Shown piece by piece: positions 38,501-64,000 of a stretch of 64,000 nt of DNA. A program made the translations under genes and the position numbers. Position 1 is the first letter of the stretch; each line of letters begins with the position of its first letter. The stretch covers positions 348,306,454 through 348,370,453 of the forward strand of contig NC_133620.1 in the NCBI RefSeq assembly GCF_048593235.1, given 5' to 3'. This DNA is from Sminthopsis crassicaudata (lineage: Eukaryota). The notes beneath the pieces were generated by a model. The model had not been told where the DNA came from, searched no databases, and saw only the letters and a list, made by a program, of their open reading frames with translations.

Positions 38501-39142
38501 TCTATCACATATTCTTAACCTGAGGATCATGAACTTGTTTTTAAGTATCTTAATAATATTACTGGTTTCCTTCATAATCCTTAGTATTTTGTGCATTTAA
38601 AAACATCTTGAGATGGCATCCACAAGCTTCACTAGACTATGTACAAAGAGTCTGTTTAAAAAAAAAAAAAAAAAGGGATGAGCCCTAAGACTAAATGCTT
38701 GTAATTTCCTTTCAAGCTATTTTATGAATTGTTTTTCTTTGTATTTCTTAGCTCCAGCTACCTTTTCTATCTGCTTCCCTTCTGTACCTTTTTGCTTGCT
38801 TGGGCCAGTTCTTTCATCTGGCCAACATGTCAGGTCCTCAAAACATTCTGCCCATTGAAATCACCATGGCAATATTGTGAGCCTGAAATACAGTAAAAGC
38901 ATGCTGGAAATTTCGTTTAGCATTATCAAACCCTTACTTCTCTGTATCCCAACTACTCAGGTTGGCACATTTGTTAGACCCATGCTAAAACAGACTGAGA
39001 TTCTGAGAATAGCTAGTGGGGCAAAGGGGAAGAGAGAGAAGACTTGGATTCTGCCACTCAATCTTGTATCTTGACTGATGACATATTTTTCCCTTATACT
39101 GGCTCCAGGAGGTGTCCTCTGAACATTCTGCTCCAAGGAATC

Positions 39143-39445
39143 ATGGCAGATGTTGGCTGGTGGAAGTTGACCTTTTTGCGCAAAAAAAAGTCAACTCCTA
39201 AGGTGTTGTATGAAAGTCCAGACACTTATGCCCATCTAGATGGAGCTACTGAGCCCACCCGGCCCGAGGGCGGGAGTGCCAACAGTGACTTTAATGCCCG
39301 TCTAGAGAAAATTGTGGACAAGAACACCAAGGGCAAACATGTCAAGGTCTCCAATTCTGGACGCTTTAAGGAGAAGAAAAAGGTCCGAGCCAGTCTGGCA
39401 GAAAATCCTAAACTCTTTGAGGATGGAGATGGAAAAGGACAGTGA
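39143..39445 (+). CDS. PRR15L: Proline-rich protein 15-like, 100 aa, single coding exon
   Basis: [24 protein letters not shown]...[40 protein letters not shown], the recognisable PRR15/PRR15L signature; splice acceptor at ~39108 upstream of the ATG; syntenic position and orientation. Confidence 0.95.
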
Positions 39446-43469: not shown

Positions 43470-46400
43470 TCATGGTGAAAGTCTCTCATATAACCAGTCA
43501 TTCGCACCACGGTGGGTCATGGGCCCTGATGCAGGCTCTCCAGGTTGCAGCCTTCGGAAGACAATCCGATCGTGCAGTCGGTTGGTTTGACCCTGCCAGA
43601 ACTCTACTACTTCTGGATATAGGATATAGCCACCCCTAAAGGGAGAGGGAGAGGTTTCATAGTTGTGAAGCTTCCTTCTATAGACTTGGTTCAAAGCCAC
43701 TGAGAGAAGTGGTTGGGCTGAACTTCATCTCAGGCCCAAGATAATGTCTGCGGCTGGTCCCTGAGGGGCTGAGGCTCTGTCACCTTGCAGGTCAGAATCA
43801 AATGGGATAACTTCCCATTTTCAAAACAAAATGCTAGATTTGGTGTGGAAGGCCAGATTTAAATCTTATGCAACTTAACTGTGTGACTTCACTTGTCTGG
43901 GGTTAAATAAAATAAACTAGATGGTTTCTGAGGTTCTTTCCATCTATGATCCAACAGAAGCTGTGTCACTCACCAATATTTAGGCTTGGGTACATCCTGA
44001 TCCTGGTATATCCCCTTTAACTCTTCATTCTTCTTCCTTAGATACTGTTCAAGAGGAAGGGAAATATAATGGGTACCAGAATCCCTGGGGAAAATCCCAG
44101 TCCAGGGATCTGAAAATGATGGTTCCCTCTGCCTGATTAAGTATATATGAGAAACTCTGGAAGAATAAAGACCACAAAGAGAGTGGATAGGTGCTCCTTT
44201 CTCTCTGTGTCCTCTTTCCCCATGTCACTCACCTCCCGATCTGGGATAACAGAGCTCTGGTGACTGACGACTGCCCCGATTTGACTGCTTTTAGGGCGGG
44301 AATGGAAATATAGCTCAGCCTCCTCTTCCGGCAGCCTCTGTACCTGTCCTTCAACACGTACCTGCTCAGACAGCCACAGGTGAGGGGGTAGGGTGGAGAT
44401 GGAATTCTTCTAGTAGATGACCCAGTCACCTTTATTTTCCCCATCCACCTCAAAACACAATCTAGTCTGACCCAGGAGCCAGGTCCTCTGTTTTTCTATA
44501 TTGGAGGATGGATACTTAGGACAAAGAGAGATTTCCTGGGAAACCTCTCTCCAGTGTACCCAACATTTTTACCATCTTTGCTTACTTAGACCTTTCTGAC
44601 CCTATCCCAAACACGCTTACCTGTCTATTGAGAGGCGCCCAGTAGAAGACGAGGGAGGCAAAAGGGTTAGAATCCTGGAGAAAACAGAAAAAGGCATAAG
44701 GACAGGGTGAAAAATAAAAGCCTCCTCCCCATGAGGGGGAAATGTAACTTAGCTTTATAGAGCAAGAGTGGAGAAGAAAGATGAGAATGAGGCTTTCTGG
44801 GAAGAGCAGTTGTTGTACTTTCTCCCACACTTCTCATTTGCTGGCCACAAGGGCCCAAAAGAGTCGCTTCTTTCTACTCTGTCCTGGGAACCTAGCCTTC
44901 TATATCTGAAGAGTGGAGAAGCTAAGTGAGGAGAATGTAAGGGGGGAAAAGGGGAGGAAGAACGTACCAGAGTTTCAGATCCTCTTTCCTTATTTTTATG
45001 GAAGGACACAAGAAGGGAGATGTGAAATGCCTGTCATGTTGGCATGAATAGAGGGAGAGCTTTTGGTTTTTTCTTTACTAGAAACCCTCACCAGCTCTTT
45101 TCCTTTTCGGCTTTCAAAGTTAGTGAAGAAACGGAAACCATCCTGGTCAAAGCCCTTTAGCAGCAGCATTCGGGCAGAAGGCTTTCCATCCCTAAGACAC
45201 ATAGAAATAGAAAGAATGGTCAGTACCCCATCGTCATTCCCTCAATTCCCTCCTGTAAAGGAAATTAAAGAAAAGGGATTTGATTAACTTGAGGCAGCAT
45301 TGACTGTGCCTTAACTCCATATTATCTTGACCCTTAAAAATGTGGCTCATTTAAGGACAAAAACCAGGAATCAAAATCTATCAATTATTTATTGAGCACT
45401 CTACACATGGTGCTGTGAAAGAGGTGTATGTGCCCCCAAGTTTATTACTTAGGGAAAGATATAAAAATGTGGGAAATAAAGTGACCAATAAAAATAAGAG
45501 GTAATGATAAAATTAAATTAAAGTAACAAGATTACAAGAGGCAATTGTAACATTCTCCTCTAAAATGTAATGTTCTCTGGGAGCAGGTTTCTTGGGGGCT
45601 TTTGGAGGCAGCCTTCCTTTCAGTTCAGTAATCACCCCAAAGGCAGCCGGAGTTAAAGTCCAAATCCTTTATTATCTCCTTCACTTGGGGCTCAACTTTC
45701 TGGAGACCTTTCTCTCTCCTTGGTTCTGAGAGGCCTGCCTTCTCTGGCTTCTGAATCTCCAAGACTGAATCCTGGCTGAGGCTCCTAGTGGATCTTGAAG
45801 ACACCAATCCTTATATCAGTAGGAAACCATTAAATCAATGCTAAACTAGATTTAATCACTGTCTCCTCAATTCCACTCAATCCCTATCTCCTTGTAGGAT
45901 TAAATCAATCATACTGATCCAAGCTAAACTAGATAACTATAGTTTCTTATCAGTTCCACTGATTTAGCTCCTCATTTCTTTTTTTTTTTTTTTTGAATGT
46001 TGAAAACTAGCTTTATATGTAGTTGGAAAAATAAAATACTATTCAGAATTTTTTAAACATTAATTTTATAATTATAACATTTTTTTACAACATTATCCCT
46101 TGTACTCCTTCTGTTCCGAATTTTCCCCTCCTTCCCTCCACCCCCTCCCCTAGATGGTAGGCATTCCCATACATATTAAATATCTTATAGTATATCCTAT
46201 CCTAGGTACAATATGTACAGAACCGAAATTTGTTGTTGTTGTTGCAAAGGAAGAATTGTATTCGGAAGGTAAAAATAATCTGGGAAGAAAAAAACAAAAA
46301 AAAAATGCTAACAGTTTACACTCATTTCCCAGTGTTCCTTTTCTGGGTGTAGCTAATCCTGTCCATCATTGATCAAATGTAATTGAATTTAGCTCCTCCT

Positions 46401-47790
46401 TTCAAGTTCTGGCCCATACCAGGTAATAATAGCCATTAAAGTCTTAAGATTTACAAAATACTTCACATACATATTATCTCCTTTACTTCTCATAATACCC
46501 CAGTGAAGGGAGGGTTATTATCATCACATGAGGCTAAGAGACTTGCCCAGAGCCCCATAGTATCTGTTTGGGGCAAGATTTGAACTGAGGTCTTCCCTTC
46601 TCCAACTCCATGCTCTAACCACCACTATGCCAATTAAGACAAGAGGTACAGACTCAAGGCAGGTGGCCATAGTAGTTCGCCATCTATATAAATCTAATGT
46701 GACGATAAATTGTAACTTTCATTGTGGTGGCAAGAACTGGAAACGGGGGAGGATGTCTGTTAATTGGGGAAGGGCAGATTGTGATGGAATACTATTGTGC
46801 TATGGGAAATAGGGAGATCTGTGTGAAATGATGAAGAGTGAAATGAGCAAAGCCAACACTGCTTACAGTAAAACATTTTAAGAACTAAGTCATTTTCACT
46901 TAACACTTCCTAGCTGTGTGACCCTGGGCAAGTCACTTAACCCCAGCCTCAGGGGGAAAAAAAAAATCATTTTGACTATCATAAGTACCCAAATTAACTT
47001 CAAAGGACGTAAGGAGATGCCTTCTGCACCCAGAGAAAGAACTGACAGATGGATGTACAGAATAGTTTTACATATACAGTCAAATCTGGGGGGAGGGGAA
47101 AAAAGGGAAAGGGAAATTTACTCGGTAACATATCGATTGGGAAGGAACAGCCTTCCCAACGTAATAGATTTTCAGTTTCGCATTATCATCTTTTATACTA
47201 AAAACAACAACAAAAAGTGTGAGTGCGGAGGGGCAGTGCCAACCTGGTGCAGAGGCCAGGCCTGCTCCCCCCGGGAGAAGGAGCAAGGGTGGGGAAGGCG
47301 GCGGTGCTGGGACCAGACCTCGGGGTCCTCACTAGGAAGCAGGGGTGGGCAGTGCTGACCTGGTGCAGGTGGCCAGGCACATGGCATTGGCTTCAAACAC
47401 CTCCGGGCACCGGGCGGCTTCTTCGAACCAGCTAGAGAACTGCTGGATGGGGTCCAGCGAGACCAGATGCGCCTCCTCGAAGGCCTGGGCGAAGGTGAAG
47501 GGCAGAGCCGGGGCCTGTCCCTGAGCTCCCGGGCTCCCCCGGCCGCCCCCTCCCTCCTTCCCTCCGGCTCCCCCTCTGCCCCCGCGGGAGCTCCAGACAT
47601 CGCTTCCCCCCGACCCCTCGGAGGCGGCACCTCTTGGTCCTTGAGGTAGCTCTTCCTCATGTGTCCCAGATCCATGACAGCTCGAACCGCACACCCGGTC
47701 CGCAGGGAATCCGTCAGCACCGCCCGCTGCCAATTCCACCACGTCACGACGCCCAGCAGTACGCTACTCACCCCCCCGTCGGGTCGTCAT
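43470..47790 (-). CDS. PNPO: Pyridoxine/pyridoxamine 5'-phosphate oxidase, 7 coding exons
   Basis: Exons on minus: 47631-47790 (see frameshift finding; in-frame ATG at 47675), 47360-47484, 45092-45191, 44621-44674, 44233-44361, 43974-44044, 43470-43635. GT-AG introns with consistent phases. Motifs [66 protein letters not shown]. Confidence 0.95.
45970..46375 (-). mobile_element. L1 3' end fragment(s) in PNPO intron 2
   Basis: Poly-T followed by the reverse complement of an L1 3'UTR. Confidence 0.75.
46898..46966 (+). mobile_element. 5'-truncated WSINE1-like SINE
   Basis: cacttaacacttcctagctgtgtgaccctgggcaagtcacttaaccccagcctcagggggaaaa; flanking tcatttt repeat. Confidence 0.8.
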
Positions 47791-48900
47791 GGCGACCACA
47801 AAGCCTCGTGATTTGCCACTCTGCGGCCCGCCCCGCGTCCCCCTCTATTTACTCATTCTCTTTCCTTTTCTCCCCCTCCTTTTCTCACCCCAGTACCCGG
47901 TTCTGATTCAGCTTCCGACTCTTCGCTTCCTCCCAAGCCCGGAGGGCCCAGCCGCTCAGTCTAACCTCCCGCCGACTCCGCCCCTTCCATTCTAGAATCC
48001 AATGGGAGGCCAGGGTCGGGGAAGCGGGGGACAACACGGAAAGCTCATTGGCTGAGTCCTCCGGGAACGGGGCCAATCGGAACGTGAACAACAGAGCCTC
48101 CGCACCAATGGATAGCGCCGACGGGGGCGGGAACAAAGAGACCAGGAAATGTAGTCACTGCCGTCAATACGCACATGGAGGTGTTGTTAAAGGTACAGGA
48201 GCTGCCGGAATCGGAGCTGGGGAGGGGAGGGGGAGTGCACCTGAGACGTGGGGGGATAGGCCGTGGTGTGGTGGGGGGAGGCAATCTCAGGGCAGCTGGG
48301 ATGATTAGGCGTCGCATGGACGGGAAGGGGAAGAGGGAGCCTCAGGGGGCAGCTCGGGCTTTGGGAAGGGGAGAACTGGGACAGGGGCAGGGTAATGGGG
48401 TGAGCCGCGCTGGGGGAAGGGAGAGCCGGCGCCGGGAGGGCGTCTCGGGGAAGAAGTTAGTTGTAGGACGGAGGACTGAGGCTGGGTGCGGGCTGCGGGG
48501 AGGTCTCCATAAGGCAGGTAGGCACTCGGGCTCGCCCTCCCGGGTTCTGAGACGGCGCTCCGCGCCTCGGGCTCCGTGCGGGTGCCGCAGGCTTTCCTGC
48601 CTTGACCTCCCCTCGGGCTGAGTCTCCTCGCTTCTGTCTCCAGGTGCCCCGGGGGCCGGTCCCCCGCTCAGTGCCGGCAGATGGCTGAGGGGGCCGGGGA
48701 CAGGGTGGCTCTGCAAGGCCACCTCCAGGCTGCGGACCCCGGGCTCGGCGATGCAGAGCCAGCCGGTGCCCACCCCACCTTTGACCTGACTGAAAGCTCC
48801 CTGGGTGGGGGCCCTCTGTGTACTCCCAGTTTTCAGCAACAACAGCAACTGGAGTTACAAGAGCCGCCCAGGCAGGTGCCCCTGGAGTGCGCCAGGTAAG
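47200..48900. promoter_or_regulatory. CpG island and bidirectional promoter (PNPO / BEN-domain gene)
   Basis: High GC and CpG; CCAAT boxes at 47999, 48047 (reverse), 48073 and 48105; GC box near 47957; divergent genes on either side. Confidence 0.85.
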
Positions 48901-51900
48901 GGATCCCTTGCTGGTTCTTTGAGGCGGTGAATAGTCAAATCTCCAGCGTCCATCTTATGCAGATTGCTCCCAGCTTCATTATGTGCTCAAGGGTATGTAC
49001 ATTTTCAGAACCGAACAGTCTGCCAGATAAACCTCTGCCAACAACTGCTGCTTGTATGAGTATATTCTCCTCCTAGCCTCCGGGGTCCCTGAGCTGGGAG
49101 GGACTCAGAAACCACATAGTCTCATTTTGCAGATGGGGAAACTGAGGCCCGGGGTGTTGTCCAAGGTCACACAGGCAGTGTCAGCTCTGGGATGTAAACG
49201 AGGGTTCACCAACTTCGGTCACTGCTTATTCCATTGAAAAGATGGATTATGTGTTATTCGGGATTCTCCGGAAAACCCCTCCCTGCCATTGTAGTAAGGT
49301 GAGAGCTTACTGTACCACTTCCTCCTGTCTATTTCTCCACCTGTAAAATCCATGTTGTGGATTACAAGTAACATGTTGATGTCACCCTCAAGGTGACGCG
49401 CTTATGTTCTTGCGGCCACACTGGCCAGCCCTCCCTTGGCTGTAGCACATTCTGAGGGCAGCCAGGAAGAGGAGAGAAATGTCCCTCAGAGGCCTAGGGC
49501 CCAGGGGCAAGGTTAGTCAAGCTGAATTATAAGGATGGTGGTAAAATACAAATGTTACCAAGTGAATGATGGTGAAATACACAGAAGACAGTTACCAAGA
49601 GTGATGGAGAACCAGACTGCAGACCTGAGTATTGAGGAGGTGAAATTGAGACTGGTTACTTTCATACAGTGTGGGAGAGCACGGCCCCTGACTCAAAATG
49701 CCACTCAAAGTGAAGATTAGCAGCTTTATTAGGGTCTCACCTAGGAGAAGCGGGCAGTCCTCACTGAGCGCTCAGAGGAAGCCCATGGTTACAGTTAGAA
49801 GCGATTTAAATAGTCAAAAACCATAGGAACTCACGACTCCCTCCCCTCATTCGGTTAATTTCGCAGCTTGCTCACTGCTTGCTTAAGTGGAGGTGGTAAA
49901 TATGTTACAAAGGTTTGCTAAATTCTAGTCATCTGGATCCAGTTGACTTATTGCAGGTGTGCTTGCCTAAGTTTGCTATGGTTGGCGCTTCACAATGTTT
50001 GCGGATGCTCGCTTGAGCTGATAGGAGCATTCTACTGTAATGTGTGTACAAAGAGTTTCATTTCCCCAAACCCATCAGACTGTCCTAAACTAAAATTTAG
50101 ACTGCAGGCTCAGTCTACCTTAGTTAATGATTTTATGTGAAACCACACCAATCCCTCACAATTCCAAGGTCAGTGGGGTCAGGACAGTGGCAGAGCTGAC
50201 TGTTATTTGGGCTTTGGTGATGGGAGTTCAGAGCCTGAAGGTCCAGGAATATGACTCTAAGTCTTACAATGGGACCCAACAAAGGCTAACACTGAGCTGA
50301 GTATCCGGTCCTTGGCATTGGGATCTCTTATTCCCCCTCTGTCACTTTCCTCCCCTTCTACTCAGTGACTCTGTGCTTTTCCTTTGTAAGATTAAGAGGA
50401 CCCAGAAGGCCGGAACCACCCCTCCCTCTTTCTTCTGGTTCTTTGCAGTTTGTAATAGGCTTTGCCCACAAGGGTTATTAAAAAATTGACTTTGTTAAAA
50501 GCATTATCTGTATTTAGCAAACTCTTGTGCTGAGCTCTGGGGTGGGGGTGGGGGAATGAAATCCCAGCTCCTGGGCTTCTTGGCTTTCTTACTGGGGTCT
50601 GGTTTAGTTGTATGGAGAGAAATTTTTTTCTGGGGGCTTGAGTAAGAGATCCACACATTCTGCCTGTTTCCAGATACTTGGGTCCCTGAAATCCTGGGGG
50701 AATTGCTTCAGGAACTAAAACCCATACCTCTTTGGCACCTTATTTTAGCTTGGGTGAAATGAGGTGATGGGAATAGCCGATGAAGGTGTTCCCCTCCACA
50801 TCCCACTTCCTCCCAAGCGTCTCTCCATGGGCTGGGGCGTGGACACGGCTACCCGAGGCTCAGATTTGTGTTTTGCTTCTAGTGTGCAGGCCCGGGGGAT
50901 ACTGACTCTGGGGATGCCTGCCCCACCACTGCTGGCACCAGAAGAGGAAGCCAAGAACAGAAAGCGACCATGGCCCGCCAACGGGCCCAGCCTTGGCCCT
51001 CCCTTCCCACGGGGGCTAAGTGTCCCGGATCTGTCGGCTGCTCCTTTCTTCCCAAGTACTGGCTCCAACAGCCTGGACATTCGAGCTGGGGGCCTCCAGG
51101 ACGCTCCCCGCTTCCCAAGGACGCAGGAGCCCCTGCGGGCCGCCCGTCCCACCCCTGCCCAGCTGTGCCACCCCCCTGCCCAGCTTTGCCACCCCCCTGT
51201 CCTGAGCCGGTTGAGCACAGAGCCACTAGAGCCTCTGCCCACAGAAGGCGCCTGCCCTTGGGCGGCCAGAGGGGGCAAAGTCACGGGGCTGTATGCCGAA
51301 CTAGTAAAAGAGTTGGAGTTACAGATGGCAGAGCTTCGGAGGCTGCTGGTCTCCAGGGAAGAAGCAGTTCTGCAGCAAGAGAGGAGGATCCGTGAGCTGG
51401 AACTGGAGAATCAGCAGCTCAAGGGTCAACTGCGGAGCCTAGAGGAACAGAACGATCTGTTGTCCAGCACCCGAGGTGGCGAGGGGCTCAAAGAGCCCTT
51501 TCCCAACAGCAGCCTCAGCGCTGGGAGCCGCAGCCTGGGTAATGGGAGCTGGCCTCCCTGGGACCTGGACGGGGGGCCCTCAGGCTGGCCTGCAGAGATG
51601 ATTGTGGGCTCCAGCCAGCTTTGCCTACCATTTCCCTCTCTTTGAGCAGCCCACTTTTCTGGAGATTCGCCTTCTCCTACAAGCTCTGCCTTTTCCTCCA
51701 CTCCAGGGCTTTCTTTCCTTTTGCTCAGGCCCTTGTTCATGACACTACTTCCCAGATTCTGTCCTTCCTCCCCAAGAAGCCCTTCACCATGCCACCTTCT
51801 CCTGTGCTCAGTCACTCATGATCCCTTTGCCATCCTGGACTGACAGGTGGCTGCCATCCCTCCTCTTCCCTAGAACCCTCTGCTTGGTGCCTCTCAGCAG

Positions 51901-54255
51901 GGGCCTCCCAGAAGCAGGACCAATACTTCCATGCATCCTGGACCCATAACAAAAGGAACCTCAGAAAGAGGGGCTTGGAAAAGAGGTCCTCATGCTGGGG
52001 GGGGTTAAGGTTAGACTCCAGTAAGTCCTCCCGGCCCCATCCACAGCCATCCCCATAGGTGTGGCCTCTCTCTTCTCAGATGTCAACGAAGGGAACATCC
52101 AGTTCCTCAAAGGCCTGGTGGGGCTACTGGAGAGCAACATGGCATTACAGGTGGGTCCCTGATGAGCTAGTAGCTCCTGGGGCCCAAGGAAGAGGGACAG
52201 AGATCAGGCAGTGGGTGGGTGTCAGGACACACTTTTGAAAATCATCCAGATGCCCATGGTCCCCAAAGTCCACACCCAAACATATAAAACAATGGAGCTA
52301 AATGTAAATGTGCATCTCATTTTGTGTGCTGCTTCCTCTCCAGGAGCATATAGTTTACACCTTCCCCACAAACCCTAGCTGACTTCAGTTGCCCACAGGT
52401 GGAGGATGTGAAGGGGGCAAGGGCAGGGGGAAGAATCCAGCCCTTGGTTGTGGGGCTCAAAGGGGCCAGTTAGAAGCAGGAAAGCCAGGGGCATGTTCCC
52501 AGGAGGGTACCTGTAACAGGCAAGAAGGTGACCAGTGGCCTGGCACTGGTGAAAACATTGCCAGCATCTTTGGGAGAGGCTGCCAACCTTTCTTGTAAGG
52601 GATACCATAGGAAGCTGAAGAGCTGCGGCTTCTCTTTCTCAGAGTTGCTCTCTCTTCCTTCTCCAGGCGAATGGCCTTCCAGCCCCACTTCCCACATCAC
52701 CACCTATAGAACCCAAGGGATCTCCCGCTGAGGCCCCACGGTCCCCACCAGTCTGTAGGCTTCGAGCAGGACTCCCCAGTGGCTTCCCAGCATGGCTGAA
52801 CTCTGAGGATGGGGTGGGCAGCCCTGCTACGCTGAGTGAGGCCACCTGCCTGTGGGAGGAGAATATACAGGATACACTGCCGGATGGAACCCCTGTGTGG
52901 GCGTCACCTGTGGAGGTGGGTGGGTGCTGCGCATGACTCAGTTCCCCAGGGACTGAGAAATGAACCTCGAGCCCTTGAAGAAGTCAATCATTCAGTATCT
53001 AGATCCAGACACTTGGGGATGCTGGTCCTGAAGAGATGCCCATGAAAGCATCAAGCCAGAGGGATGGAGTGTTGACAGGCTAATAATGCCTTTTTGTCTT
53101 CTCTAGGAGAATGGGAGACCCAAACTGGAGCTGATCCCCAACTCAGGGGTCTACATCACTCACCACCAGCTAGATGACCTGTCTCAAGTATCAACAGACA
53201 AACCCAAGTTGATGACAAGGCGTATGTTGGATTATTTCTTCTCTCGGGAGACACTGGCTCGTTCCTCTGCCACTGGGCAACGAATTGCACATAACAACAC
53301 CACCATGGAGAAGCCCATCCGGCTGCCTGTTGCTGTAGTCAATGCCATCAAAGGTACCCAGAGGCAGATTCCCACCAAGGCAGTTGTTTTGTGAGGCTGG
53401 AGGAGGGAAGGAGCAGTCTGCACTGTTAGCTGGAATGGGCTATACAATAGTGGCCTGAAATCCCAGATTGCTTTAAGGAGTCCCAACATTTTATATATAT
53501 ATATATATATTTTTTTTTTTTTTCTGAAATGACTCAACGTCTCTCCTTTGGCAATAGATACAGTTCTGTTTTCCAAGTTGTGATTATTAAAACAATTAGA
53601 GAAAGCTGAGACACATTGTGGGTACAGGTCTAGTTCAGTCATGAGTTGTTAAAAGGGTGGTATTCAGTACACTGAGGGATGCATCTGCAGGAAGGATAGA
53701 GGGGAGATATGAGGAAAATCTGGAATGATAACAAAGATGTAAATCTTTTAAGAACAACCTGATAGTCTATACAGGGTTACGAAAAAGGGGATGAGACCTT
53801 GTAGGGTTGGAAGGTTAAAAAGCATTCCTAGGTCCAGTGTTCCTTTCTTGCCCCGCCCCCCAATTCTTTTCTCTATTTATGGGCCAGATCTTAGAGAGCA
53901 GGGAGGAGACAATTCTCCATTTCTATGTCAGCTCTCCCTGATTTGTGGCCTCCTATGGTTCCAGCTTTTGGCCTAGTCCAGGCATTTTGGTTTGATATGG
54001 GCAGTGAGAAGGATCTGGGAGGCTGAGTAACATCTTTCCCTTATAAACTCAGATCACAGTGGTATTACCTGGGAGTTCACTCTTGCCTGCCTCCCACTCC
54101 TGACCAGGAGCTAGATCTGAGCAGCCCCCTTTCTGTCTTCCCCAGAATATGTCACCAAGGTGTGTGGCCGTGGCTGTAACTTTAATGCCGTCATCAACAG
54201 CAAGTGTGGGACCTCAAGGAGGGCAGTCAAGAAGATGATTGTAAAGATGGAGTGA
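48681..54255 (+). CDS. Unnamed coiled-coil plus NACC-type BEN-domain protein, 515 aa, 6 coding exons
   Basis: Exons 48681-48895, 50883-51538, 52080-52150, 52667-52915, 53107-53353, 54146-54255. All five introns are GT-AG with pyrimidine tracts; phases 2,1,0,0,1 join into one 1548-nt open frame. C-terminus KLELIPNSGVYITHHQLDDL...LMTRRMLDYFFSRETLARSSATG...LPVAVVNAIKEYVTKVC...FNAVINSKCGTSRRAVKK aligns by eye to the NACC1/2 BEN domain. The exact N-terminal start is less certain. Confidence 0.85.
49670..50147 (-). mobile_element. Probable solo LTR, antisense in the first coding intron of the BEN gene
   Basis: TGTGG...CCACA ends; AATAAA on minus near 49726; CpGs present; no convincing TSD found. 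Confidence 0.5.
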
Positions 54256-54832
54256 GTGGGGTGAGGGGGGTGGGCCAGGTCCTACAATCTGCCAGCAGAT
54301 ACGTATTTTTTAAAAGCGCTCTCCAAGCAAGCACTGCACCATCAGGATCTGTCTTCAGGAGAGTCATGGGAATGGATAATCCTTCCCCTAAGCTTTGTAT
54401 TTTTTTCTGGGCATATTCCTGTTCTGAGGGCTATATAGGAATTGAATCCTAGTATCTAGGATCTCATGTGAGCTGTGAAAAGTCTGGTCAGCTGGGCAGA
54501 GAAGAGAAAAAAAAAGTGAGGGAATGATTGTTGTCCCATCTCCTTTGGCGCTGTTGGCTTTGGGAAGGGCAGCCAGAGCTGAGGACTAAGTGGCCAGAGA
54601 CTATACTATCTCCCCAACCCCGTGTTCTTATGTCCATGTACATTCTGGAAACAAGTGGTGTTGATTTGGGGTAGTGAAGAGGAGCCTCACTGAATGACCA
54701 GCTCCATGCAGGGGTTATGTTGGTCTCCCCTACCAAAGGAGAGGTCTGTCTGCAGAGCAGGCATCTTGAGAGATCAAAATTCATGACCAGAAGACTTCAC
54801 AGACTTTCTTGTACATAAGCCAGAACATTTCA

Positions 54833-54838
54833 AATAAA
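54833..54838 (+). terminator. Candidate poly(A) signal of the BEN gene
   Basis: AATAAA about 580 nt after the stop, with ATTAAA 12 nt further on. Confidence 0.6.
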
Positions 54839-56584
54839 GGTTGGATTAAACCAAGGTCACTGCTGCTGCTGATTTGCCACATCCTTCCATTCTTTCTAGA
54901 TCATGGGATTTTAGAGGTAGGAAAAACTACAGCATCTTAGTCGATTGGGAAAGTGCTTTGCTCAAGACCATCCACATGCTAAAGAAACAACAATTAAGAG
55001 GCAAACTAGTGTGACCTCTGCGTCCTGACGGTCTGTACTCTTCAGAACTCAGGTGGACTTGCAAGTTGCTAATCTTTTTCCTCTTGATTAGGGGAAGATG
55101 CTTGGTCAGTGTCCACATTTAGTTTTGAAACTTAGAAACAGTTGCCAGGAAAGGGAAAAACCCTTGCTACCTGGGGGAAAAACATGAGAATGGGGGCCTT
55201 CTGCTGAGGTAGAAAAGAGGCTAATTTATTATTTACTGCTAGAATTTGGAAGTGTTTAAAACAAAATATTGTTTGCCAATATGGGCTGGAGGAATGGTGT
55301 TCAGATCTATGATTTTCTCAGTGTAGAGTTCCCAGTGAGAAACTTTTTTTTTTTTTAAAAAACACAGATGGGCAACTGTTCTGTAAACTAATCTTTAATT
55401 GCCAGTGGAAAAATAAGGTAGACACAATTCATGATCCTGTCTGTCAATATCTGAGTCCTTAGTTTTCTTTGCCAAATAGAAATGGCCTTTTGTCCAAGTT
55501 TGGACAAGCTGCTGTTCTTAACACCTGAGTTCCAAGTGGCTGTAGTGTGCAATTAGTAAGGAAGCATTGAAAAATGAAACATGGAAACTGCTAGATCTCT
55601 CCTGCCACCCAATATGTTGTAGATATGGACACTAGCTCTAGCTCATTAGGACATGGTTTTAGAGGACAGATATTTAGAATACCAACTACAAATTCTCTGA
55701 GAGCATAATGACAATGCTAGCTTCATTTTACCATTAAGGAAACAGATTTAGAAAGTTAAATGACTTGTCTTGGCTAGTGAGTTGAGATTGGGATTCAAAT
55801 TTCAGTTTGCCAACTCTGTTTAGCAGCTATGTGCCATTCAGCTTCCATACTGTTAAGTAGAAAGTTGCCTAGCAAACACTGGTAACAAAGGGAAAATTCT
55901 AGAGCAAAAGTGGATGGCTCAGGATAACCTCTCCCCACTATAGCACATCTTTAGCAAATGTCCTTCCTCGAATAAATTATAATTCTCTATCAACAAGGAA
56001 ACCATTTTTTTATCTTGAACCTTAATCTAGCTTCTTAAGTAAATGACTATGTTCTGTCAGGAGCCTTTTCTGACCTCTGCCTGATGTCTCACCCTTTCTT
56101 CTTTGTACTTAGGTTAAGAAATGCAGAGGTGCTTGCTCCTTATTTTCATAACCCTCCTCACTACGACACAAGCACCTATTGAAATAAGCCACCCAAGTAA
56201 GACAGGCCATGAATGGAAGCACACTTCTGCAGCCTTGTGGTTAATGGGTGTGCCTCCACCATGGAGTCAGTTTCTCCTCTGGGAAAACTGGTTTATATAA
56301 GAAAAAAATGAGGACATCTACCCAAATAGGTTCCCTATGGGATTATGCCATTATTGGGCATGCATAAGTGGTAATACCTACCTTTGCAATTTCAGATGGG
56401 ATTCCCTGTTAAGGGCAAGAAGGGTAAGAGAAGCTAAGCTTTACTTTCTCCTTGGGCCCTTCTCCAAGCTCCTGAAGTTCTAGATTCCATCCCCACCTTA
56501 CTTTTTCCCCAGTGAAAATTCTCCAGGGTAAAAGACAAAGAGAGCCTCAAGGTCAAGCTGCTGACTTTGCCTCAGGCAACTAAA

Positions 56585-57767: not shown

Positions 57768-60700
57768 TTACAAATTCTTTGTGACCAGATGGGTCTTGTA
57801 ATGCTTGGTTAGGTGGTCGCTCCTCATGAAGCGCTTCTGACACTGGGCACACTCGAAACGCTTGTCACCTGGGGAGAGAAAAGGCCTGTCATTCCTGCCC
57901 CCTACTTTCCACATTCAGCATATCCTAGAGGTCCTGCTCCACAGAGCTCATCCCCCAAAGGCAGGAAATAAGAGAGTGCAAACACCCAAATGAAGATGTC
58001 CTTAATCAAGTCCCACCTCAGACCACATATAAACTGGTTTCAGACACCCTGTGGTTCCACTGAGCCACTTTACTTTCTTATTAGTCTCCAGCACAATTTT
58101 TTACACCTATTCCCTGATCCTCTGAATGTGATTTGTTCATTTCGATTCCATGCTTTTGGGTTATTCTCTACACTTGGAATGATGCCCCCCTAATTGTTTC
58201 CCACAAATCTATACCTGCCTTCCAAATAAAAGGACAATATTTCTAGTTTGAACCCAAGCCTTTCTAATCTCTTCAGCACTCAAGATATTCAGCTGGTACT
58301 TTTAAGTCTAGCCATGCAAGTGGCTCTATTAGTTGTTTCATGAATGTGCATTTTCTCTCTCCAACAAATGTTGCACTCCCTCCCTGATGGTCAGTATTCT
58401 ATTACCCCAAAAGATAACCGACTCCCAAGAGACTGGGCAGAAGAACCAAATTTTATTTTTTCTTTTTGGCGGTAATTAGCTCAGTTTTCTGTGTTATGGG
58501 GAGGAATTAAGAGTTTCTGCTGCAAATTCCAGCCCCACTCAGGAAGTGAATCACAATCATAAGAAAAGAGTTGGGAAGCCATAAAAAGTCATCAAGTCCA
58601 ACTCCATTTTAAGGATAAAGAAACAGGCCTGGGGAAGATAAGGACCTTGTCCCGGGTCACAAAGGCAAAGGTCAGAAGTCGAGCTACTCCCTGCCATCTA
58701 AGACTGGGGGGGGCACGGAGATGGGCTGACCTGTGTGGGTGCGGGCATGCCGCTGGAGCTCATCACTACGCGTAAACCTCTTGCCACAATAAACCCAGTT
58801 ACAGACGAAGGGCCGCTCTCCAGTGTGCAGGCGTACGTGGGCACGCAACAATGATGTCTTTCGGAAGGTCTTGCCACAGTCAGGGATGTGGCACACATGC
58901 TTCTTCTTCCCCTGCTCTCCAGACCTGGGGGGGATTTGGAGGGAAGCAAGAGTGAAGGCAAAGGGAGAGCACCCCAGGATGGGCCAGGAGAGGTACAGCA
59001 TGGGGGCAGGAGGAGTAAGGGGGAAGGACGGCACAATAGGAGGGTGAGAAGGGCCCACCTTCTTCTCTTAGAATTACCTTTTCTCCCCATCCTTGCAGTT
59101 GGGGCAAGTACAAGCCATACGACGCCTCTTCTCCCCTGGCTGGACCTCTCCTGCTAGGGCCTGCTCCATCTGCAGCTGAATCTGCGTGGGGCTCAGGCCA
59201 CTGATAGTCAGGTTGTTCCCAGAAACATTCTGTACAGTGAGCTGCTGCTGTCCTGAGGGAGGGGCAGGAAAAGGAGATGGAGGTGGGAACAAAGGCCTGG
59301 CTCAGACACTGGTCCCTCCCACAGGTGGAACCCCATCACTCTTCTGTCCCCCATTTGGATCTAGAAAGGCTCTTGCATCTCAAAGATGCTGTGTAGCAAC
59401 ATCCCACCCCCAACCCAGCTTCAGGGAAGTCCTCAGGGAGAGTCTATCCCTGCATGTAAGTAAGAAACAAGCTGCAATCAATCAGGGCACTTTGGAAAAA
59501 TTTCTAAGACAGAGAAGTCACAAACACAGCAGAACCAGACTAAAGTGTCAGTGGGAACTATTTAACAAAAATAAAAATACAATAAAATGTAGATACAACT
59601 TATTTTAAAACTAAATATGTCACTTACAGGGATCCTGATGTATATATTTGTGCTCTTACCCCCTCCCCCAATTCCTATTTCAGTTTAACACCTAAGATAG
59701 TAATGCATGAGCTGATCAACCTTGTGGAAACTATATTATCTTAGCCCTGAGGGTCAGCTGGTCAGGAACCAAAGGAAGAATAGCAATAGCCCCTTCTCTA
59801 CCTTTCCACTGACAGGTGAAAAGTCTAAAATGCATTAAGAATTAGGAAGATTGAAAAAGCTATCATTAGTCTGAAAATAGTCCTTTGCTTAGTTACAGTG
59901 CAGTGTTAGTGATCACCATGGGACAGTTATTTGCAAGGCTGATAACCTATTTGCATTGCTAGTACTAGACCTTGATCCTATCTGAGGAAGGTCTCCTTTC
60001 ACTCCCATCAGACTTAATACTCCTTTATCCCAATTCTCCCCAGCACTTCCATTCTCACTTTGGAGCACATTCCTTTGCTTTGGTCTGTGAAAGTGTTTCT
60101 AAAGATTTTCAAGTGTCCTATCTCCTCAATCCTGATAGTTTATCATGGTTCCTTAAGGGCCTTTTCCATTTGCTTGTTTACAGCAGAAACTGCCCATAAA
60201 ATTGTCTCTCCACTTAGAGAAGAGGGACTATCTTTTCCCTTTGTGTCCCCAGTGCTCAGCCCAGTGCTTAATGGCTTGCCATTCATTCATCCCTTCCTCC
60301 TTCCATCAGAGGAAGGACTCACGGTAGCATCAAGGATACGACTGCCCAGTCAGTGCTGTGGGCAGACAGACTCTTACCTCCAGTGTTGGTGATAGTGACA
60401 GGTACACCTTGGACCTGGACACCATTGATATTAATGGTCTGCATAGCTTGCGCAGCTGCTGCCAGCTGGGCCGCATTCAGGCTGATGATGCCTCCAGCAG
60501 GAGCAATCTTTGGCAGGGGCCGTTCCTTCCGAGAAGTGGCCGTTGAATGCTTTTTACTGGTGCTTCCCAAGTGGGGGCTCCGGGTTACAGGGCTACTACA
60601 GGAGGTGGTAGAGGCAGCAGGCACTGTCACCGAAGGGGGTTCTTGTAAGAGGACTGTCTGCAGCTCCCCCGAAGGCATTCTGATATAAATCTGGGTGGGA

Positions 60701-61644
60701 GCGAGAAAGAGGGTCAGCCACTGCAATGCTGAGAATCAGGGGCATGGACAGGGCTAAGTCTTAAGTCTCTTTCTTGAACTAACTCACAGATTGACATATA
60801 CCTTAAAAAGCTCTTCAGATGGGGTAATGGTGAATATTCAATGGAAATCAAAATTTCCCTTTTCAGTTATGATTAGTGCCTGCCTGGCACACTACTTTAC
60901 ATATGGTAGATGAACATCCTATTTGATGGTTTGAACAGTTTATGTTCTTTATGAATACCAAAAATTGTAAACAAAACTTCAAAGAATGATAGAAATTTTC
61001 CAGCTGGAAGAGATCTCATAGGTCCTTCAGTCCAACTTATTAATATTGGAGAAAATGAAGGCTAACAGGTTATCAGGTATATTCAAGACTATCACAAGTC
61101 AGTGACAATATGGTCTTCCTTACTCCAAAGCTGCTACCTGCTGAGCTCTCACACATGGTCAGGGAATAGGGTGTTTGGAGTAAATATTTTTTAGTTATGA
61201 TCACTAATCCTGATGCTTAAAAATTTAAAATAAAAACCCTCTTGATAAGATTTTTTTACAAAACAAAGTCTCAGCTGAAATTTGCAAGTACTTAAAATTT
61301 TGTCTTCCATTTTCAACTGATAAATAAAATTTTCAACTCTGAAAAGGGAAGGGGATATTTAAAATCTTTGTTTATGGAGGTACAGGCCTAATTTTATAAG
61401 AAAATATCACCATTCCCTGGGCTTTTAGGAATGAGATCTGCTTGCCATGTTGTCTTTTTAAAACCCCAGGTATAAATAAATGGAGTCAGTCAGTAGTTCC
61501 TCATGTTATAGGCCAAGATTTCCATAAGTGAAATGCCCTAGAATCAATGTAGACCCAATCTGAGTCATCAGGGACTCACTAATAGAAAGATCACTTATTG
61601 TATTGGTTGTTGGATTTAACATCCCAGAGTCTAAGGTTCATCCT

Positions 61645-61676
<32 letters not shown>

Positions 61677-63939
61677 CTGTTGTCAAGGAAAAACATAAGA
61701 TTAGAAAGCCCCTTTCCTGCAGTCAATAAGACCTGTTTGATTACTGTGTGTATGCGTGGTGCGCTTGTGTGTAAAGTGCCTTCTTGAATGAGCAGGACCT
61801 TATCCCTCTGTTGTTAATTTTACAGAATGAGAATTCTTACTAACTGTACTGGATGTTATTTCAACTGATAAAAGATAAATCTTTACAATTTCCCTGGCTT
61901 CCTTTATGATCCATCTCAAACTGTCCTTCTACATATTGAAGCCCTTTTCTTCTCAGACCTCTTTCTAGTTAAGTTACCCTGTATATGTATCTTATTTATG
62001 CATTGGCTCTCCCTTGTTAGAATGTAAGTTCCCTGAGGACTAGAATGGGTGTAGCCTTTGTTCTCTTAGTACATGTCTAGCACACAGAACATTGATTAAT
62101 AAATGCTTTCTATTTTTTTTAAATCATTATTTCTTGTCCCCATACCTTCGAACTTGACATGTGTAGTCAACTCTTAATGATCATCTTACAGACTTTTAGT
62201 CATCAGAATGTTTCAGAACTAATTTCCCCTTACCTCCCATCTATTCATTCATTCCTCTGACTGTCAATCATTGGAATAAAATTCCCCAAGAAAATGCACT
62301 TTAATGCTGGGTACCATTTTCGCTACAAAAAATATAACAATGTAGTTTAAGTTGTAATAAAAATGAACATTAGGATTTGATTCTTTGTATAACTCTTGTC
62401 CTCTCTTAAGAAAAACAAAGACAGCTGTGTTGCTTCCTGATAGAGGACAGACACAACTAAGATGCAGTAGCAACAGTTTTCCTTCCTTGTTTCAGTGCCT
62501 CACTCTTGATCTGTGTGGATTTGTAAACACCCTGAAGGCAAAAATTATGTATCCTTTTCCTTACCTTACCCTGCCAATACATACACACAAGTACCCAGGA
62601 ATGTTAAGACAATGTAATTAGTCAATATTTGTTGAACTGAACCCAATTTTAACTGCAAGTCCTCCCTAAGGTTACATCCCTTCTTCCTGCCTAATTCTCT
62701 TCAGTGACCAAGAATTGAGAAATTTCCTCTAAATTTTCCTGCCATTATAACAAACCTCCCCAACAGACTATTCCAAAATATATCCATCTGTTGCTGCATT
62801 TCCCAAATCAAGCTGATGCTCTGTGCTTATAAAAGCCCAACTGGAAGGGGAAGTGCCCCATATTTCTAATCCCCAACCACAGAGCAGCTTCCACATTCCC
62901 TAGAGAAAACAGGAAGGGGCAGAGAGAGGGCCTAATGTCAGCAAGGTACCTGAGTAGGTGTTGGCTCAGGCGTTTGGATCTGAAAGTCCTGGGAGGGCTT
63001 CTGGGGGACAGTGGGGAGGGTAGCAGAGGCCGCCTGCACTACTCGGAGGGCTTGCTGAGGGATCTGTACCACCTGCTGCTGTTCTGCCTTTGGAGGTACC
63101 ACTTGCACCTGCTGTACCATGGCAGGCTGGCCCCCTCCAGGACTCTGCACAATGAGGAGATTGTTTCCTGCCTGGATGATGTTGTCTGCTGTCGTCTCGA
63201 TCAGCACGGTCTCCACTTGTTCAGCCACTGCCACAGCAGGTTGAGAGGAGGCAGGGAGACCTTTTTTCCTCATCTTCTTGTTCGGCTTGATCAATGGAGC
63301 AGCGGGGCTCTCAGTGAGCAGCTGCGTCGGGGTGCCCGAGTCCGGGGTGCTCACGAGGTTGTTGACAGGCAGGGTAAGGGTCACATTGCCACCGCCACCC
63401 GTCAGCTTCACCACACCGCCTGGGCTCTGCAGCGGTGCTGCAGAACTGGCCTTCTGAATAGGGGCAGGCTTGATCGGAACAGGCTTGTGGCTGGAAGGGG
63501 AAGGAGTGATAATGGCTTGGTTGGTGCCAGGGATGATCTGGATCTGTGAGGTTCCAGTGAGGCTGGTGAGGTTAGGCTGGACTTGGATGGTCTGCCCACT
63601 GCCTGCTTGAATCTGAGGAACTGCTTGGTACTGAATGTTGGCACTGGACCGGGCCCCTTTGTTGATCATTGTAGGGTTCTGGATAGCAAACACCAGTTGA
63701 CCTCCCGGATAGGATGTGCCCAGTTGTGAACCTTGGACTTGGAGAATGTTTCCTTTGGAGGATAAGATCCCAAAATTGTTCTTTCCAGGGCTGAGGGGAA
63801 GTGGGGCGGGTTTGATGGGAACCAGTTTCCGCGGTGTGGGTTGAGGGGGAGCAGGAGGTGTTACAGCAGCTTCTACTGCAGGAGGACCAATTTTGCTACA
63901 TGTTGCAGCAAGAAGGGCTAAGGGTGATGGCTGGGAGTC
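57768..63939 (-). CDS. SP2: Transcription factor Sp2, partial (last five coding exons; 5' exons lie beyond the window)
   Basis: Exons on minus: 62950-63939, 60378-60690, 59078-59252, 58731-58924, 57768-57868; GT-AG and in phase. Sp box [18 protein letters not shown], Btd box [14 protein letters not shown], three C2H2 fingers, C-terminus [15 protein letters not shown]. Confidence 0.97.
61648..61676. repeat. (TA)n microsatellite
   Basis: tatatata run; similar runs near 23635-23665 and 53493-53510. Confidence 0.9.
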
Positions 63940-64000
63940 CTGCAAAGACCCAAGAGGAGAAAAGGAGTGAGAATAAAGTATTGCCCCCTTCTTCTCTCTA

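What the first reader, a model, noticed from the sequence alone, without database searches (positions are those of the whole stretch)
48681..54255. Intact, apparently unnamed six-exon BEN-domain gene between PNPO and SP2
Seen: six plus-strand exons with canonical splice sites and matching phases join into a 515-aa ORF, flanked by a CpG-island promoter and a poly(A) signal. The ORF track shows only fragments of it. Knowledge: the last two exons match the BEN DNA-binding domain of NACC1/NACC2 (compare NACC1 KLELVTGTNVYITRAQL...[20 protein letters not shown]...VLHAVKYYC...MNAIAADMCTNARRVVRK). None of the human BEN genes I know (BANP, NACC1/2, BEND2-7) lies at this locus. Inference: this is a functional transcription-regulator gene with no named human counterpart. 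It may already exist as an uncharacterised LOC model in some genomes.
Basis: partly seen in the sequence, partly recalled or inferred. Interest (0 to 1): 0.92.

Follow-up and report, generated by a model that had tools for sequence, protein, structure and literature searches.

The report
Unnamed conserved BEN-domain gene beside PNPO
This is a real, intact gene for a probable DNA-binding regulator, kept almost unchanged from sharks to marsupials and found in no placental mammal; databases already list it as an unnamed, unstudied "LOC" gene.

Summary
Six plus-strand exons (48681-54255), all with GT-AG borders, join into a 515-aa ORF. It is 100% identical over its full length to RefSeq XP_074117385.1, "uncharacterized protein LOC141539057 isoform X1" of Sminthopsis crassicaudata.

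The product has a disordered N-terminus with a basic KNRKRP motif. It also has a nine-heptad leucine-zipper-like coiled coil and one C-terminal BEN domain (Pfam PF10523, 44 bits; Foldseek top 17 hits are all BEN domains).

Orthologues, all "uncharacterized", exist in 11 marsupial species, turtles, crocodilians, tuatara, lizards, birds, all three amphibian orders, coelacanth and sharks. Exon sizes and the PNPO/BEN/SP2 gene order are conserved. No eutherian, monotreme or ray-finned-fish protein appeared in three database searches.

Marsupial dN/dS is 0.07-0.14 overall and about 0 in the BEN domain.

The closest named relative is NACC1/2, at about 36% identity in the BEN domain only. There is no BTB domain, and two of NACC1's four base-reading residues differ. 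Scallop and brachiopod proteins are closer.

Verdict: this is a genuine, selected, unnamed BEN-solo factor family, already annotated but never studied. RNA junction reads could not be obtained. Two other first-reader notes cover this same stretch.

The parts
48681..48895 (+). Coding exon 1 (ATG at 48681; aa 1-72, disordered N-terminus)
   Evidence: The 215-nt exon size is identical in opossum, possum, wombat and turtle.
50883..51538 (+). Coding exon 2: a proline-rich disordered region, the basic motif KNRKRP (aa 96-101, putative NLS), and the coiled coil (aa 203-268)
   Evidence: AF2 predicts a single helix at 203-268 with pLDDT above 90. One heptad register runs over nine heptads, with d = Y209, L216, L223, L244, L251, L258, L265 and a = N248, N262. 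There are weak Pfam coiled-coil hits. dN/dS is 0-0.04.
52080..52150 (+). Coding exon 3 (71 nt): conserved short helix NIQFLKGLVGLLESN (aa 294-315)
   Evidence: The size is 71 nt from shark to marsupial. Wombat and opossum X1 isoforms use a 104-nt variant.
52667..52915 (+). Coding exon 4: linker ending in the conserved LPDGTPVWASPVE lead-in to the BEN domain. It is skipped in RefSeq isoform X4.
   Evidence: P0083 lacks it.
53107..53353 (+). Coding exon 5: N-terminal two thirds of the BEN domain (beta strands, helices alpha1-alpha3 and the alpha3-alpha4 loop with R456)
   Evidence: Pfam BEN scores 32.9 bits on this exon alone. It aligns to NACC1. It is 247 nt in all seven species mapped. It is 93-98% identical to coelacanth, salamander, caecilian and turtle.
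54146..54255 (+). Coding exon 6: BEN helices alpha4-alpha5 (recognition helix VINSKCGTSRRAVKK) and the TGA stop
   Evidence: It is 110 nt in the six of seven species mapped with their standard last exon; the opossum X1 isoform ends on two alternative exons.
48107..48192 (+). Inferred upstream (5'UTR or alternative) exon. Its donor GT is at 48193. It is spliced to an acceptor whose AG lies at 48642-48643, so that exon 1 would begin at 48644.
   Evidence: Koala isoform X2 (P0001) starts here. Its aa 3-29 map to 48114-48194, and the splice motifs are visible. This is inferred by homology and was not shown for this species.
49249..49296 (+). Alternative first coding exon of RefSeq isoform X2 (P0066), inside intron 1
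47300..48700 (.). CpG-rich bidirectional promoter region shared with PNPO (minus strand)
   Evidence: for composition. One search shows the PNPO first-exon ORF at 47332-47742 on the minus strand.
54833..54838 (+). AATAAA poly(A) signal, 578 nt after the stop
   Evidence: Its use was not tested.

Best explanation
The locus is RefSeq LOC141539057 of the fat-tailed dunnart. It is a functional protein-coding gene and a member of an ancient, unnamed orthologous family of 'BEN-solo' nuclear factors. The family has sat head-to-head with PNPO since at least the jawed-vertebrate ancestor (and next to SP2 in every amniote locus examined) and has no annotated eutherian member.

Shown here:
- The gene model, the BEN domain and the BEN fold.
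- Purifying selection.
- Conserved exon structure and gene order.
- The taxonomic spread.

Inferred mechanism:
- The basic KNRKRP motif takes the protein into the nucleus.
- The nine-heptad leucine-zipper-like helix (aa 203-268), with conserved Asn at two 'a' positions, makes a parallel dimer.
- Each C-terminal BEN domain puts helix alpha5 into the major groove and Arg456 of the alpha3-alpha4 loop into the minor groove, as NACC1 does. The dimer would then read a paired or palindromic site and regulate, most likely repress, transcription, as other BEN-solo factors do.
- Two of NACC1's four base-reading residues are replaced (D462 to S498, T465 to G501), and these positions are invariant or nearly invariant within the family. 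The target motif is therefore probably not NACC's ACATGT, and it is probably the same from sharks to marsupials.
For: Gene model: 100% identity to P0171, with canonical splice sites.

Selection: NG86 dN/dS among four marsupials is 0.07-0.14 overall, 0-0.014 in the BEN domain (dS 0.12-0.33) and 0-0.04 in the coiled coil.

Conservation:
- The BEN region is 100% identical in possum and opossum, 96% in turtle, 92% in caecilians and axolotl, 89% in coelacanth and 69-74% in sharks. The N-terminus drops to 10-40%.
- Exon sizes and phases are conserved.
- The order PNPO(-)/BEN(+)/SP2(-) holds in opossum, possum, wombat, turtle and loon. PNPO is head-to-head in catshark.

Domain and fold: Pfam BEN scores 44.3 bits. 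In the AF2 model the BEN domain (about 385-515) is mostly above pLDDT 80 apart from the alpha3-alpha4 loop, and the 17 best Foldseek PDB hits are all BEN domains.

DNA-contact residues, mapped from the NACC1-DNA crystal structure (PMC11472053) through the alignment:
- R400/R401 correspond to R435/R436.
- R421 corresponds to R456.
- R468/R469 correspond to R504/R505.
- All five are kept. R456, R504 and R505 are invariant even in scallop and Lingula.

Transcripts: Logan contigs from a frog-like and a bird-like orthologue carry the uninterrupted ORF on contigs of 1730 and 984 nt. RefSeq lists four isoforms in this genome.
Against: - Most runs that hold the locus hold its introns equally, so expression and junction use in the dunnart were not shown here.
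- DNA binding, dimerisation, nuclear localisation and repression are all inferred.
- Some BEN domains (BEND3-BD1) do not bind DNA specifically (PMC8887127).
- R429 of NACC1 (a phosphate contact) is Glu here, and S423 is Ala.
- AF2 was run as a monomer, so the coiled coil is a prediction from heptads only.
- Loss in eutherians rests on the absence of annotated proteins, not on genome searches.
Confidence: 0.8

Rival explanations
1. It is a NACC-family gene (a third NACC paralogue, or a NACC copy that lost its BTB/POZ domain), and it binds the NACC motif ACATGT.
For: NACC1 is the best solved-structure match by sequence and by fold. NACC2 is the best named hit of the exhaustive search (P0025). 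Five Arg DNA contacts are shared.
Against: Pfam finds no BTB/POZ domain or any domain other than BEN. BEN identity to NACC2 is only 36%, against 47% to a scallop protein and 41% to a Lingula protein that share the family's VINSKC..RR helix. The base-reading residues D462 and T465 of NACC1 are Ser and Gly here. The locus next to PNPO is conserved to sharks.
Confidence: 0.08
2. The BEN domain here is a protein-interaction or chromatin-adaptor module rather than a sequence-specific DNA binder. The protein would then act as a coiled-coil scaffold.
For: BEND3-BD1 does not bind DNA specifically, and BEN is described as a scaffold used for both DNA and protein recognition (PMC8887127). A phosphate-contact Arg of NACC1 (R429) is Glu here.
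Against: The recognition helix and the minor-groove Arg are the most conserved parts of the protein. S498, K499, C500, R504, R505 and R456 are invariant from scallop to marsupial. The BEN domain has about zero non-synonymous change among marsupials. The closest structures are all DNA-bound BEN domains.
Confidence: 0.12
3. The model is an annotation artefact or a decaying gene. It would be transcribed only as a by-product of the PNPO bidirectional promoter, as the human lncRNA at this position is thought to be.
For: No junction reads were obtained here. Most runs that hold the locus hold its introns equally.
Against: dN/dS is 0.07-0.14 with dS up to 0.47. The ORFs are intact in 11 marsupial species and in more than 100 other vertebrate clusters. 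Splice sites and exon sizes are conserved over about 450 My. Spliced transcript contigs exist in other vertebrates.
Confidence: 0.02

Closest known systems
NACC1 / NACC2 (BEND8 / BEND9), the vertebrate BTB-BEN factors
   Same: They have the closest named BEN domain: phmmer E 2.7e-10 to PDB 8yzs, about 29-36% identity, and the same layout of two strands plus five helices. The Arg contacts R400/R401, R421 and R468/R469 are shared.
   Different: This protein has no BTB/POZ domain and has a coiled coil instead. The base-reading Asp462 and Thr465 are Ser and Gly. It sits at a different, anciently fixed locus. Invertebrate relatives are closer than NACC is.
BEN-solo factors: Drosophila Insensitive, Elba1/Bsg25A and Elba2; mammalian BEND5 and BEND6
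   Same: The architecture matches: one C-terminal BEN domain and no other known domain (concept from PMC8887127). The fold matches Insv 4ix7 (TM 0.74) and Bsg25A 4x0g (TM 0.75). That BEND5/6 and Insv also carry a coiled coil and act as repressors is from my own knowledge and was not tested here.
   Different: Sequence similarity is marginal (Insv phmmer E 0.26) or undetectable (BEND6 appears only by fold, at 14-17% identity). This is not the same orthologous group.
Uncharacterised lophotrochozoan BEN proteins (Argopecten XP_069137448.1, Lingula LOC106173933, Mya LOC128246383)
   Same: The BEN domain is 41-47% identical in the scallop and Lingula proteins (32% in the clam), and those two share the recognition-helix signature VINSKC(A/G)T(A/S)RR. 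The Lingula protein also has an N-terminal coiled-coil-like segment.
   Different: The proteins are much shorter, with no similarity outside the BEN domain. Orthology was not tested by a tree.

Membership tests
BEN domain superfamily (Pfam PF10523) | Significant match to the BEN profile above the curated cut-off | tested here: met
   44.3 bits, E 2.1e-11, against a cut-off of 23.2, covering profile positions 2-76 of 76 at aa 433-500. Exon 5 alone scores 32.9 bits.
BEN domain superfamily (Pfam PF10523) | BEN fold (N-terminal strands plus five helices, with a long C-terminal helix) | tested here: met
   The AF2 model has helices at 416-423, 430-441, 444-453, 472-486 and 492-514, preceded by short strands. 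Foldseek PDB ranks 1-17 are all BEN domains, with target TM 0.46-0.76.
BEN-solo factors (Insv, Elba, BEND5/6 type) | [quoted passage not shown] | tested here: met
   Pfam finds only BEN at E<=0.01. The rest is a predicted disordered region plus a coiled coil.
BEN-solo factors (Insv, Elba, BEND5/6 type) | Sequence-specific DNA binding and transcriptional repression | not testable with these tools
   Only indirect evidence: conserved Arg contacts and an invariant recognition helix.
NACC family (NACC1/NACC2) | N-terminal BTB/POZ domain | tested here: not met
   Pfam finds no BTB hit in P0171 or in the turtle or shark orthologues. The N-terminal 200 aa are predicted to be disordered.
NACC family (NACC1/NACC2) | NACC-type base-reading residues (D462, T465, R469 and R421 of NACC1) | tested here: not met
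   R469 corresponds to R505 and R421 to R456, both kept. D462 corresponds to S498 and T465 to G501, both changed.
BEND5/BEND6 orthology group | Detectable sequence homology beyond the generic BEN profile | tested here: not met
   The BEND6 BEN structures (7yun, 7yul) are not found by phmmer at E<=10. They appear only at Foldseek ranks 15-16, with 14-17% identity.
Vertebrate 'PNPO-neighbour' BEN family (unnamed LOC orthologues) | High identity, the same six-exon structure, and a position between PNPO and SP2 | tested here: met

The most novel reading that the evidence does not exclude
This gene is the protein-coding ancestor of the transcript that placental mammals still make from the PNPO bidirectional promoter, annotated in human as the lncRNA SP2-AS1. 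That would be a coding-to-noncoding transition at the base of Eutheria. It would have removed a transcription factor whose DNA-binding domain had been nearly frozen for more than 400 My. If so, a whole conserved regulon in non-placental vertebrates has no placental regulator, or has been taken over by another factor.
Probability: 0.3. Interest if true: 0.65.

Novelty: new member of a known kind. Interest (0 to 1): 0.5.

Why it matters
Reviews count nine human BEN-domain proteins (PMC11472053). This locus shows that jawed vertebrates ancestrally had at least one more BEN factor family. It has an exceptionally conserved DNA-reading helix and is missing from every placental proteome searched. That absence is probably why it has no name and no literature.

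The family offers a clean case of transcription-factor loss in the placental stem lineage. It also offers a candidate origin for a human lncRNA, and an untested DNA-binding specificity that could be measured quickly by SELEX. Loss of function could be studied in Xenopus, axolotl, opossum or dunnart.

It is not a new kind of system, and the gene model itself is already public.

Tried and rejected
- **Exon versus intron word shares in public runs.** Most runs hold introns 2-3 as fully as the whole gene stretch, so they give no evidence of splicing. Runs X15-X17 and X12 held 41-56% of the words in the 50883-54255 stretch, which is 39.5% exonic. They were not listed as holders of the intron-only stretch. 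This fits exon-only coverage but is too indirect to count.
- **The look-up of encoding contigs for isoforms X2 (P0063, P0062) and for coelacanth (P0008).** Nothing was on record. The look-ups succeeded with the longest isoforms of opossum, possum and wombat.
- **Literature searches.** Searches for the LOC identifiers and for PNPO, SP2 or SP2-AS1 in two papers on lncRNAs derived from lost genes, including the supplements of one, found nothing.
- **Rejected: a known named BEN gene.** There is no BTB domain and identity to NACC is low.
- **Rejected: a pseudogene.** The dN/dS values rule it out.
- **Rejected: a chance ORF.** The match to the RefSeq model is exact and the exons are conserved.
Full report
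**1. The observation**

I read 48000-55000 and fixed the exon borders by script. The exons are 48681-48895, 50883-51538, 52080-52150, 52667-52915, 53107-53353 and 54146-54255. All five introns are GT...AG with pyrimidine-rich acceptors. The phases are compatible and the joined CDS is 1548 nt (515 aa plus TGA). The mechanical ORF list shows only pieces of it.

- A CpG-rich stretch at about 47300-48700, and an AATAAA at 54833.
- Neighbours: a PRR15L-type ORF (Pfam ATAD4) on the plus strand at 39044-39445.
- PNPO exons on the minus strand from 43470 to about 47770.
- SP-type C2H2 fingers on the minus strand at 58684-59058.

So the gene lies head-to-head with PNPO and tail-to-tail with SP2.

**2. 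Identity**

Exon 5 alone passes the Pfam BEN threshold (32.9 bits) and aligns to the NACC1 BEN structures.

An exhaustive HMMER search with exon 5 found 31 proteins at E<=0.001. The first dozen are full-length or partial relatives, 73-100% identical in that exon. Looking up their clusters and comparing them with the spliced protein gave an exact match.

RefSeq also lists three other isoforms in this genome:
- X2 has an alternative first coding exon at 49249-49296.
- X3 starts at Met83.
- X4 skips exon 4.

A koala isoform (P0001) starts in an upstream exon that maps to 48114-48194. It implies a 5' exon whose donor is at 48193, joined to an acceptor just before 48644.

**3. Distribution**

Three word-indexed searches were run, with a turtle orthologue, with the BEN region of the dunnart protein, and with a 24-sequence profile. 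They returned the same set of about 105 clusters:
- 11 marsupial species.
- Turtles, alligator, tuatara, lizards and many birds.
- Caecilians, salamanders and frogs (including Xenopus laevis LOC495228 and XB5788060.S).
- Coelacanth and several sharks.

All but one are called "uncharacterized protein", "hypothetical protein" or "BEN domain-containing protein". The exception is a caecilian entry mislabelled "cyclin-dependent kinase 12-like".

No eutherian, monotreme, ray-finned fish or cyclostome protein appeared. The database includes NCBI nr and UniRef. This is strong but indirect evidence of loss, because no genome DNA of those groups could be searched here.

Outside vertebrates the nearest proteins are from a scallop (47% identity over the BEN domain), Lingula (41%) and a clam. 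NACC2 follows at 36%.

**4. Conservation of structure and place**

I mapped seven orthologous proteins onto their genomic loci. The coding exon sizes are:

| Species | Exon sizes (nt) |
|---|---|
| Dunnart | 215/656/71/249/247/110 |
| Possum | 215/638/71/249/247/110 |
| Turtle | 215/671/71/246/247/110 |
| Loon | 101/425/71/246/247/110 |
| Catshark | 239/662/71/237/247/110 |

The order PNPO(-), BEN gene(+), SP-type zinc-finger gene(-) is present in opossum, possum, wombat, hawksbill turtle and loon. In catshark, PNPO lies head-to-head about 9 kb upstream.

**5. Selection**

Pairwise Nei-Gojobori estimates on a codon alignment of dunnart, opossum, possum and wombat gave these values:

| Region | dN/dS |
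|---|---|
| Whole protein | 0.07-0.14 |
| Disordered N-terminus | 0.13-0.28 |
| Coiled coil | 0-0.04 |
| BEN exons | 0-0.014, at dS of 0.12-0.33 |

Against turtle, the BEN region has dN 0.028 with saturated dS.

Region-wise identity tells the same story. The BEN domain is 96% identical to turtle, 92% to caecilians and axolotl, 89% to coelacanth and 69-74% to sharks. The first 200 residues fall to 10-40%. This refutes the pseudogene and by-product-transcript readings.

**6. Anatomy and likely mechanism**

AlphaFold2 was run with the 24-sequence alignment. It predicts:
- Disorder for residues 1-200.
- A single long helix at 203-268 (pLDDT above 90).
- A short conserved helix at 294-315.
- A disordered linker.
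- A compact domain at 385-515, with short strands and five helices.

Foldseek against the PDB ranks BEN domains in places 1-17: NACC1, Insv, Bsg25A/Elba1, BANP, BEND6 and BEND3.

The long helix keeps one heptad register over nine heptads, with Leu at most 'd' positions (216, 223, 244, 251, 258, 265). Near-invariant Asn sits at 'a' positions 248 and 262. From general coiled-coil knowledge, that pattern suggests a parallel dimer.

A basic motif, KNRKRP (aa 96-101), is conserved in the family consensus. It is a plausible nuclear localisation signal.

The NACC1-DNA crystal structure paper (PMC11472053) names three groups of contacts:
- D462, T465 and R469 of helix alpha5 read bases.
- R421 of the alpha3-alpha4 loop reads bases from the minor groove.
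- R400, R401, N466, R468, R472, S423 and R429 contact phosphates.

Mapped through the alignment, these residues compare as follows:

| NACC1 residue | Residue here | Status |
|---|---|---|
| R400/R401 | R435/R436 | kept |
| R421 | R456 | kept |
| R468/R469 | R504/R505 | kept |
| R472 | K508 | conservative change |
| D462 | S498 | changed |
| T465 | G501 | changed |
| N466 | T502 | changed |
| S423 | A458 | changed |
| R429 | E465 | changed |

R456, S498, K499, C500, R504 and R505 are invariant in all 24 aligned sequences, including scallop and Lingula.

I therefore infer a dimeric, sequence-specific DNA binder that docks like NACC1 or Insv but reads a different, family-specific motif. Its regulatory sign is most likely repression, by analogy with the BEN-solo factors Insv and BEND6. 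None of these functional steps was tested.

**7. Expression evidence**

I could not inspect junction reads in this species.

Public runs that hold the locus mostly hold introns 2-3 as fully as exons, so they are uninformative. A few runs (X15-X17, X12) held about the exonic share of words and were not listed for the intron-only query. That is only suggestive.

In other vertebrates, two Logan contigs carry uninterrupted ORFs that span the exon junctions, so they derive from spliced transcripts:
- A 1730-nt contig from SRR5149490 carries a 491-aa frog-type orthologue.
- A 984-nt contig from SRR26222418 carries the last 288 aa of a bird-type orthologue.

**8. Comparison with known families, and novelty**

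By architecture it is a BEN-solo factor. By sequence its BEN domain is nearest to the NACC type, but it fails the NACC definition. It has no BTB/POZ domain and different base-reading residues, and it is closer to lophotrochozoan proteins than to NACC.

It is not BEND5/6. There is no detectable sequence match, and the fold match has only 14-17% identity.

No paper in the library mentions any of six orthologue LOC identifiers. Two papers on lncRNAs derived from lost coding genes do not list this locus.

Another first-reader note (s1-153266) suggests that human SP2-AS1 occupies this position. A paper lists SP2-AS1 among genes co-altered with PNPO and its chromosomal neighbours, which is consistent with its lying nearby. 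The descent of that lncRNA from this gene was not testable here.

**9. Verdict**

The gene is real, selected, ancient and unnamed, and it appears to be missing from placentals. It is, however, already annotated in RefSeq for this species and more than 100 others, and it belongs to a known kind of factor. I rate it as moderately interesting (0.5), not 0.92.

Noticed in passing
window 51150-51200 (exon 2): The dunnart protein carries a 6-aa in-frame tandem duplication (PAQLCHP repeated) that opossum, possum and wombat lack. This accounts for 515 aa against 509 aa (alignment).
   Followed up: partly
window 48107-48192 and 48644-48680: The upstream exon contains an ATG. In the koala isoform X2 model this ATG is used to read exon 1 in another frame and to skip exon 2, rejoining the main frame at exon 3. 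In the dunnart it could act as an upstream ORF.
   Followed up: partly
window 49110-49190 (intron 1): This stretch contains the motif ...cagatggggaaactgaggcccgg..., which from memory resembles the core of a MIR-type SINE.
   Followed up: no
window 39044-39445 (+), 43470-47770 (-), 58684-63945 (-): The neighbouring genes were recognised: a PRR15L-type ORF (Pfam ATAD4, 108 bits), PNPO exons, and an SP2-type gene with C2H2 fingers and a long Gln/Pro-rich exon.
   Followed up: yes
L008:352-603: This Logan genomic contig (SRR31508491, organism not given) holds an exon-5 homologue with intact AG/GT borders but only 85% aa identity. It has a change at Pro408, which is invariant elsewhere. It may come from a fast-evolving or decaying lineage.
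   Followed up: partly
codon alignment: The dunnart lineage shows about twice the non-synonymous divergence of the other marsupials in the N-terminal 205 residues (dN 0.077-0.091 against 0.016-0.042), while its BEN domain is unchanged.
   Followed up: no
P0002, P0006, P0010 (caecilian, axolotl, Xenopus): The amphibian models end with ...KKMSIRIDW(M/T)EGG... and a long tail instead of ...KKMIVKME-stop, which suggests a different 3' end or a read-through of the last exon border. Bird proteins are about 400 aa, with a much shortened N-terminus.
   Followed up: no
P0072: The Rhinatrema bivittatum orthologue is named 'cyclin-dependent kinase 12-like' in RefSeq. This is evidently a mislabel caused by low-complexity similarity.
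   Followed up: no
window 53490-53525 (intron 5): A (TA)n repeat followed by a T-run of about 17 bases.
   Followed up: no
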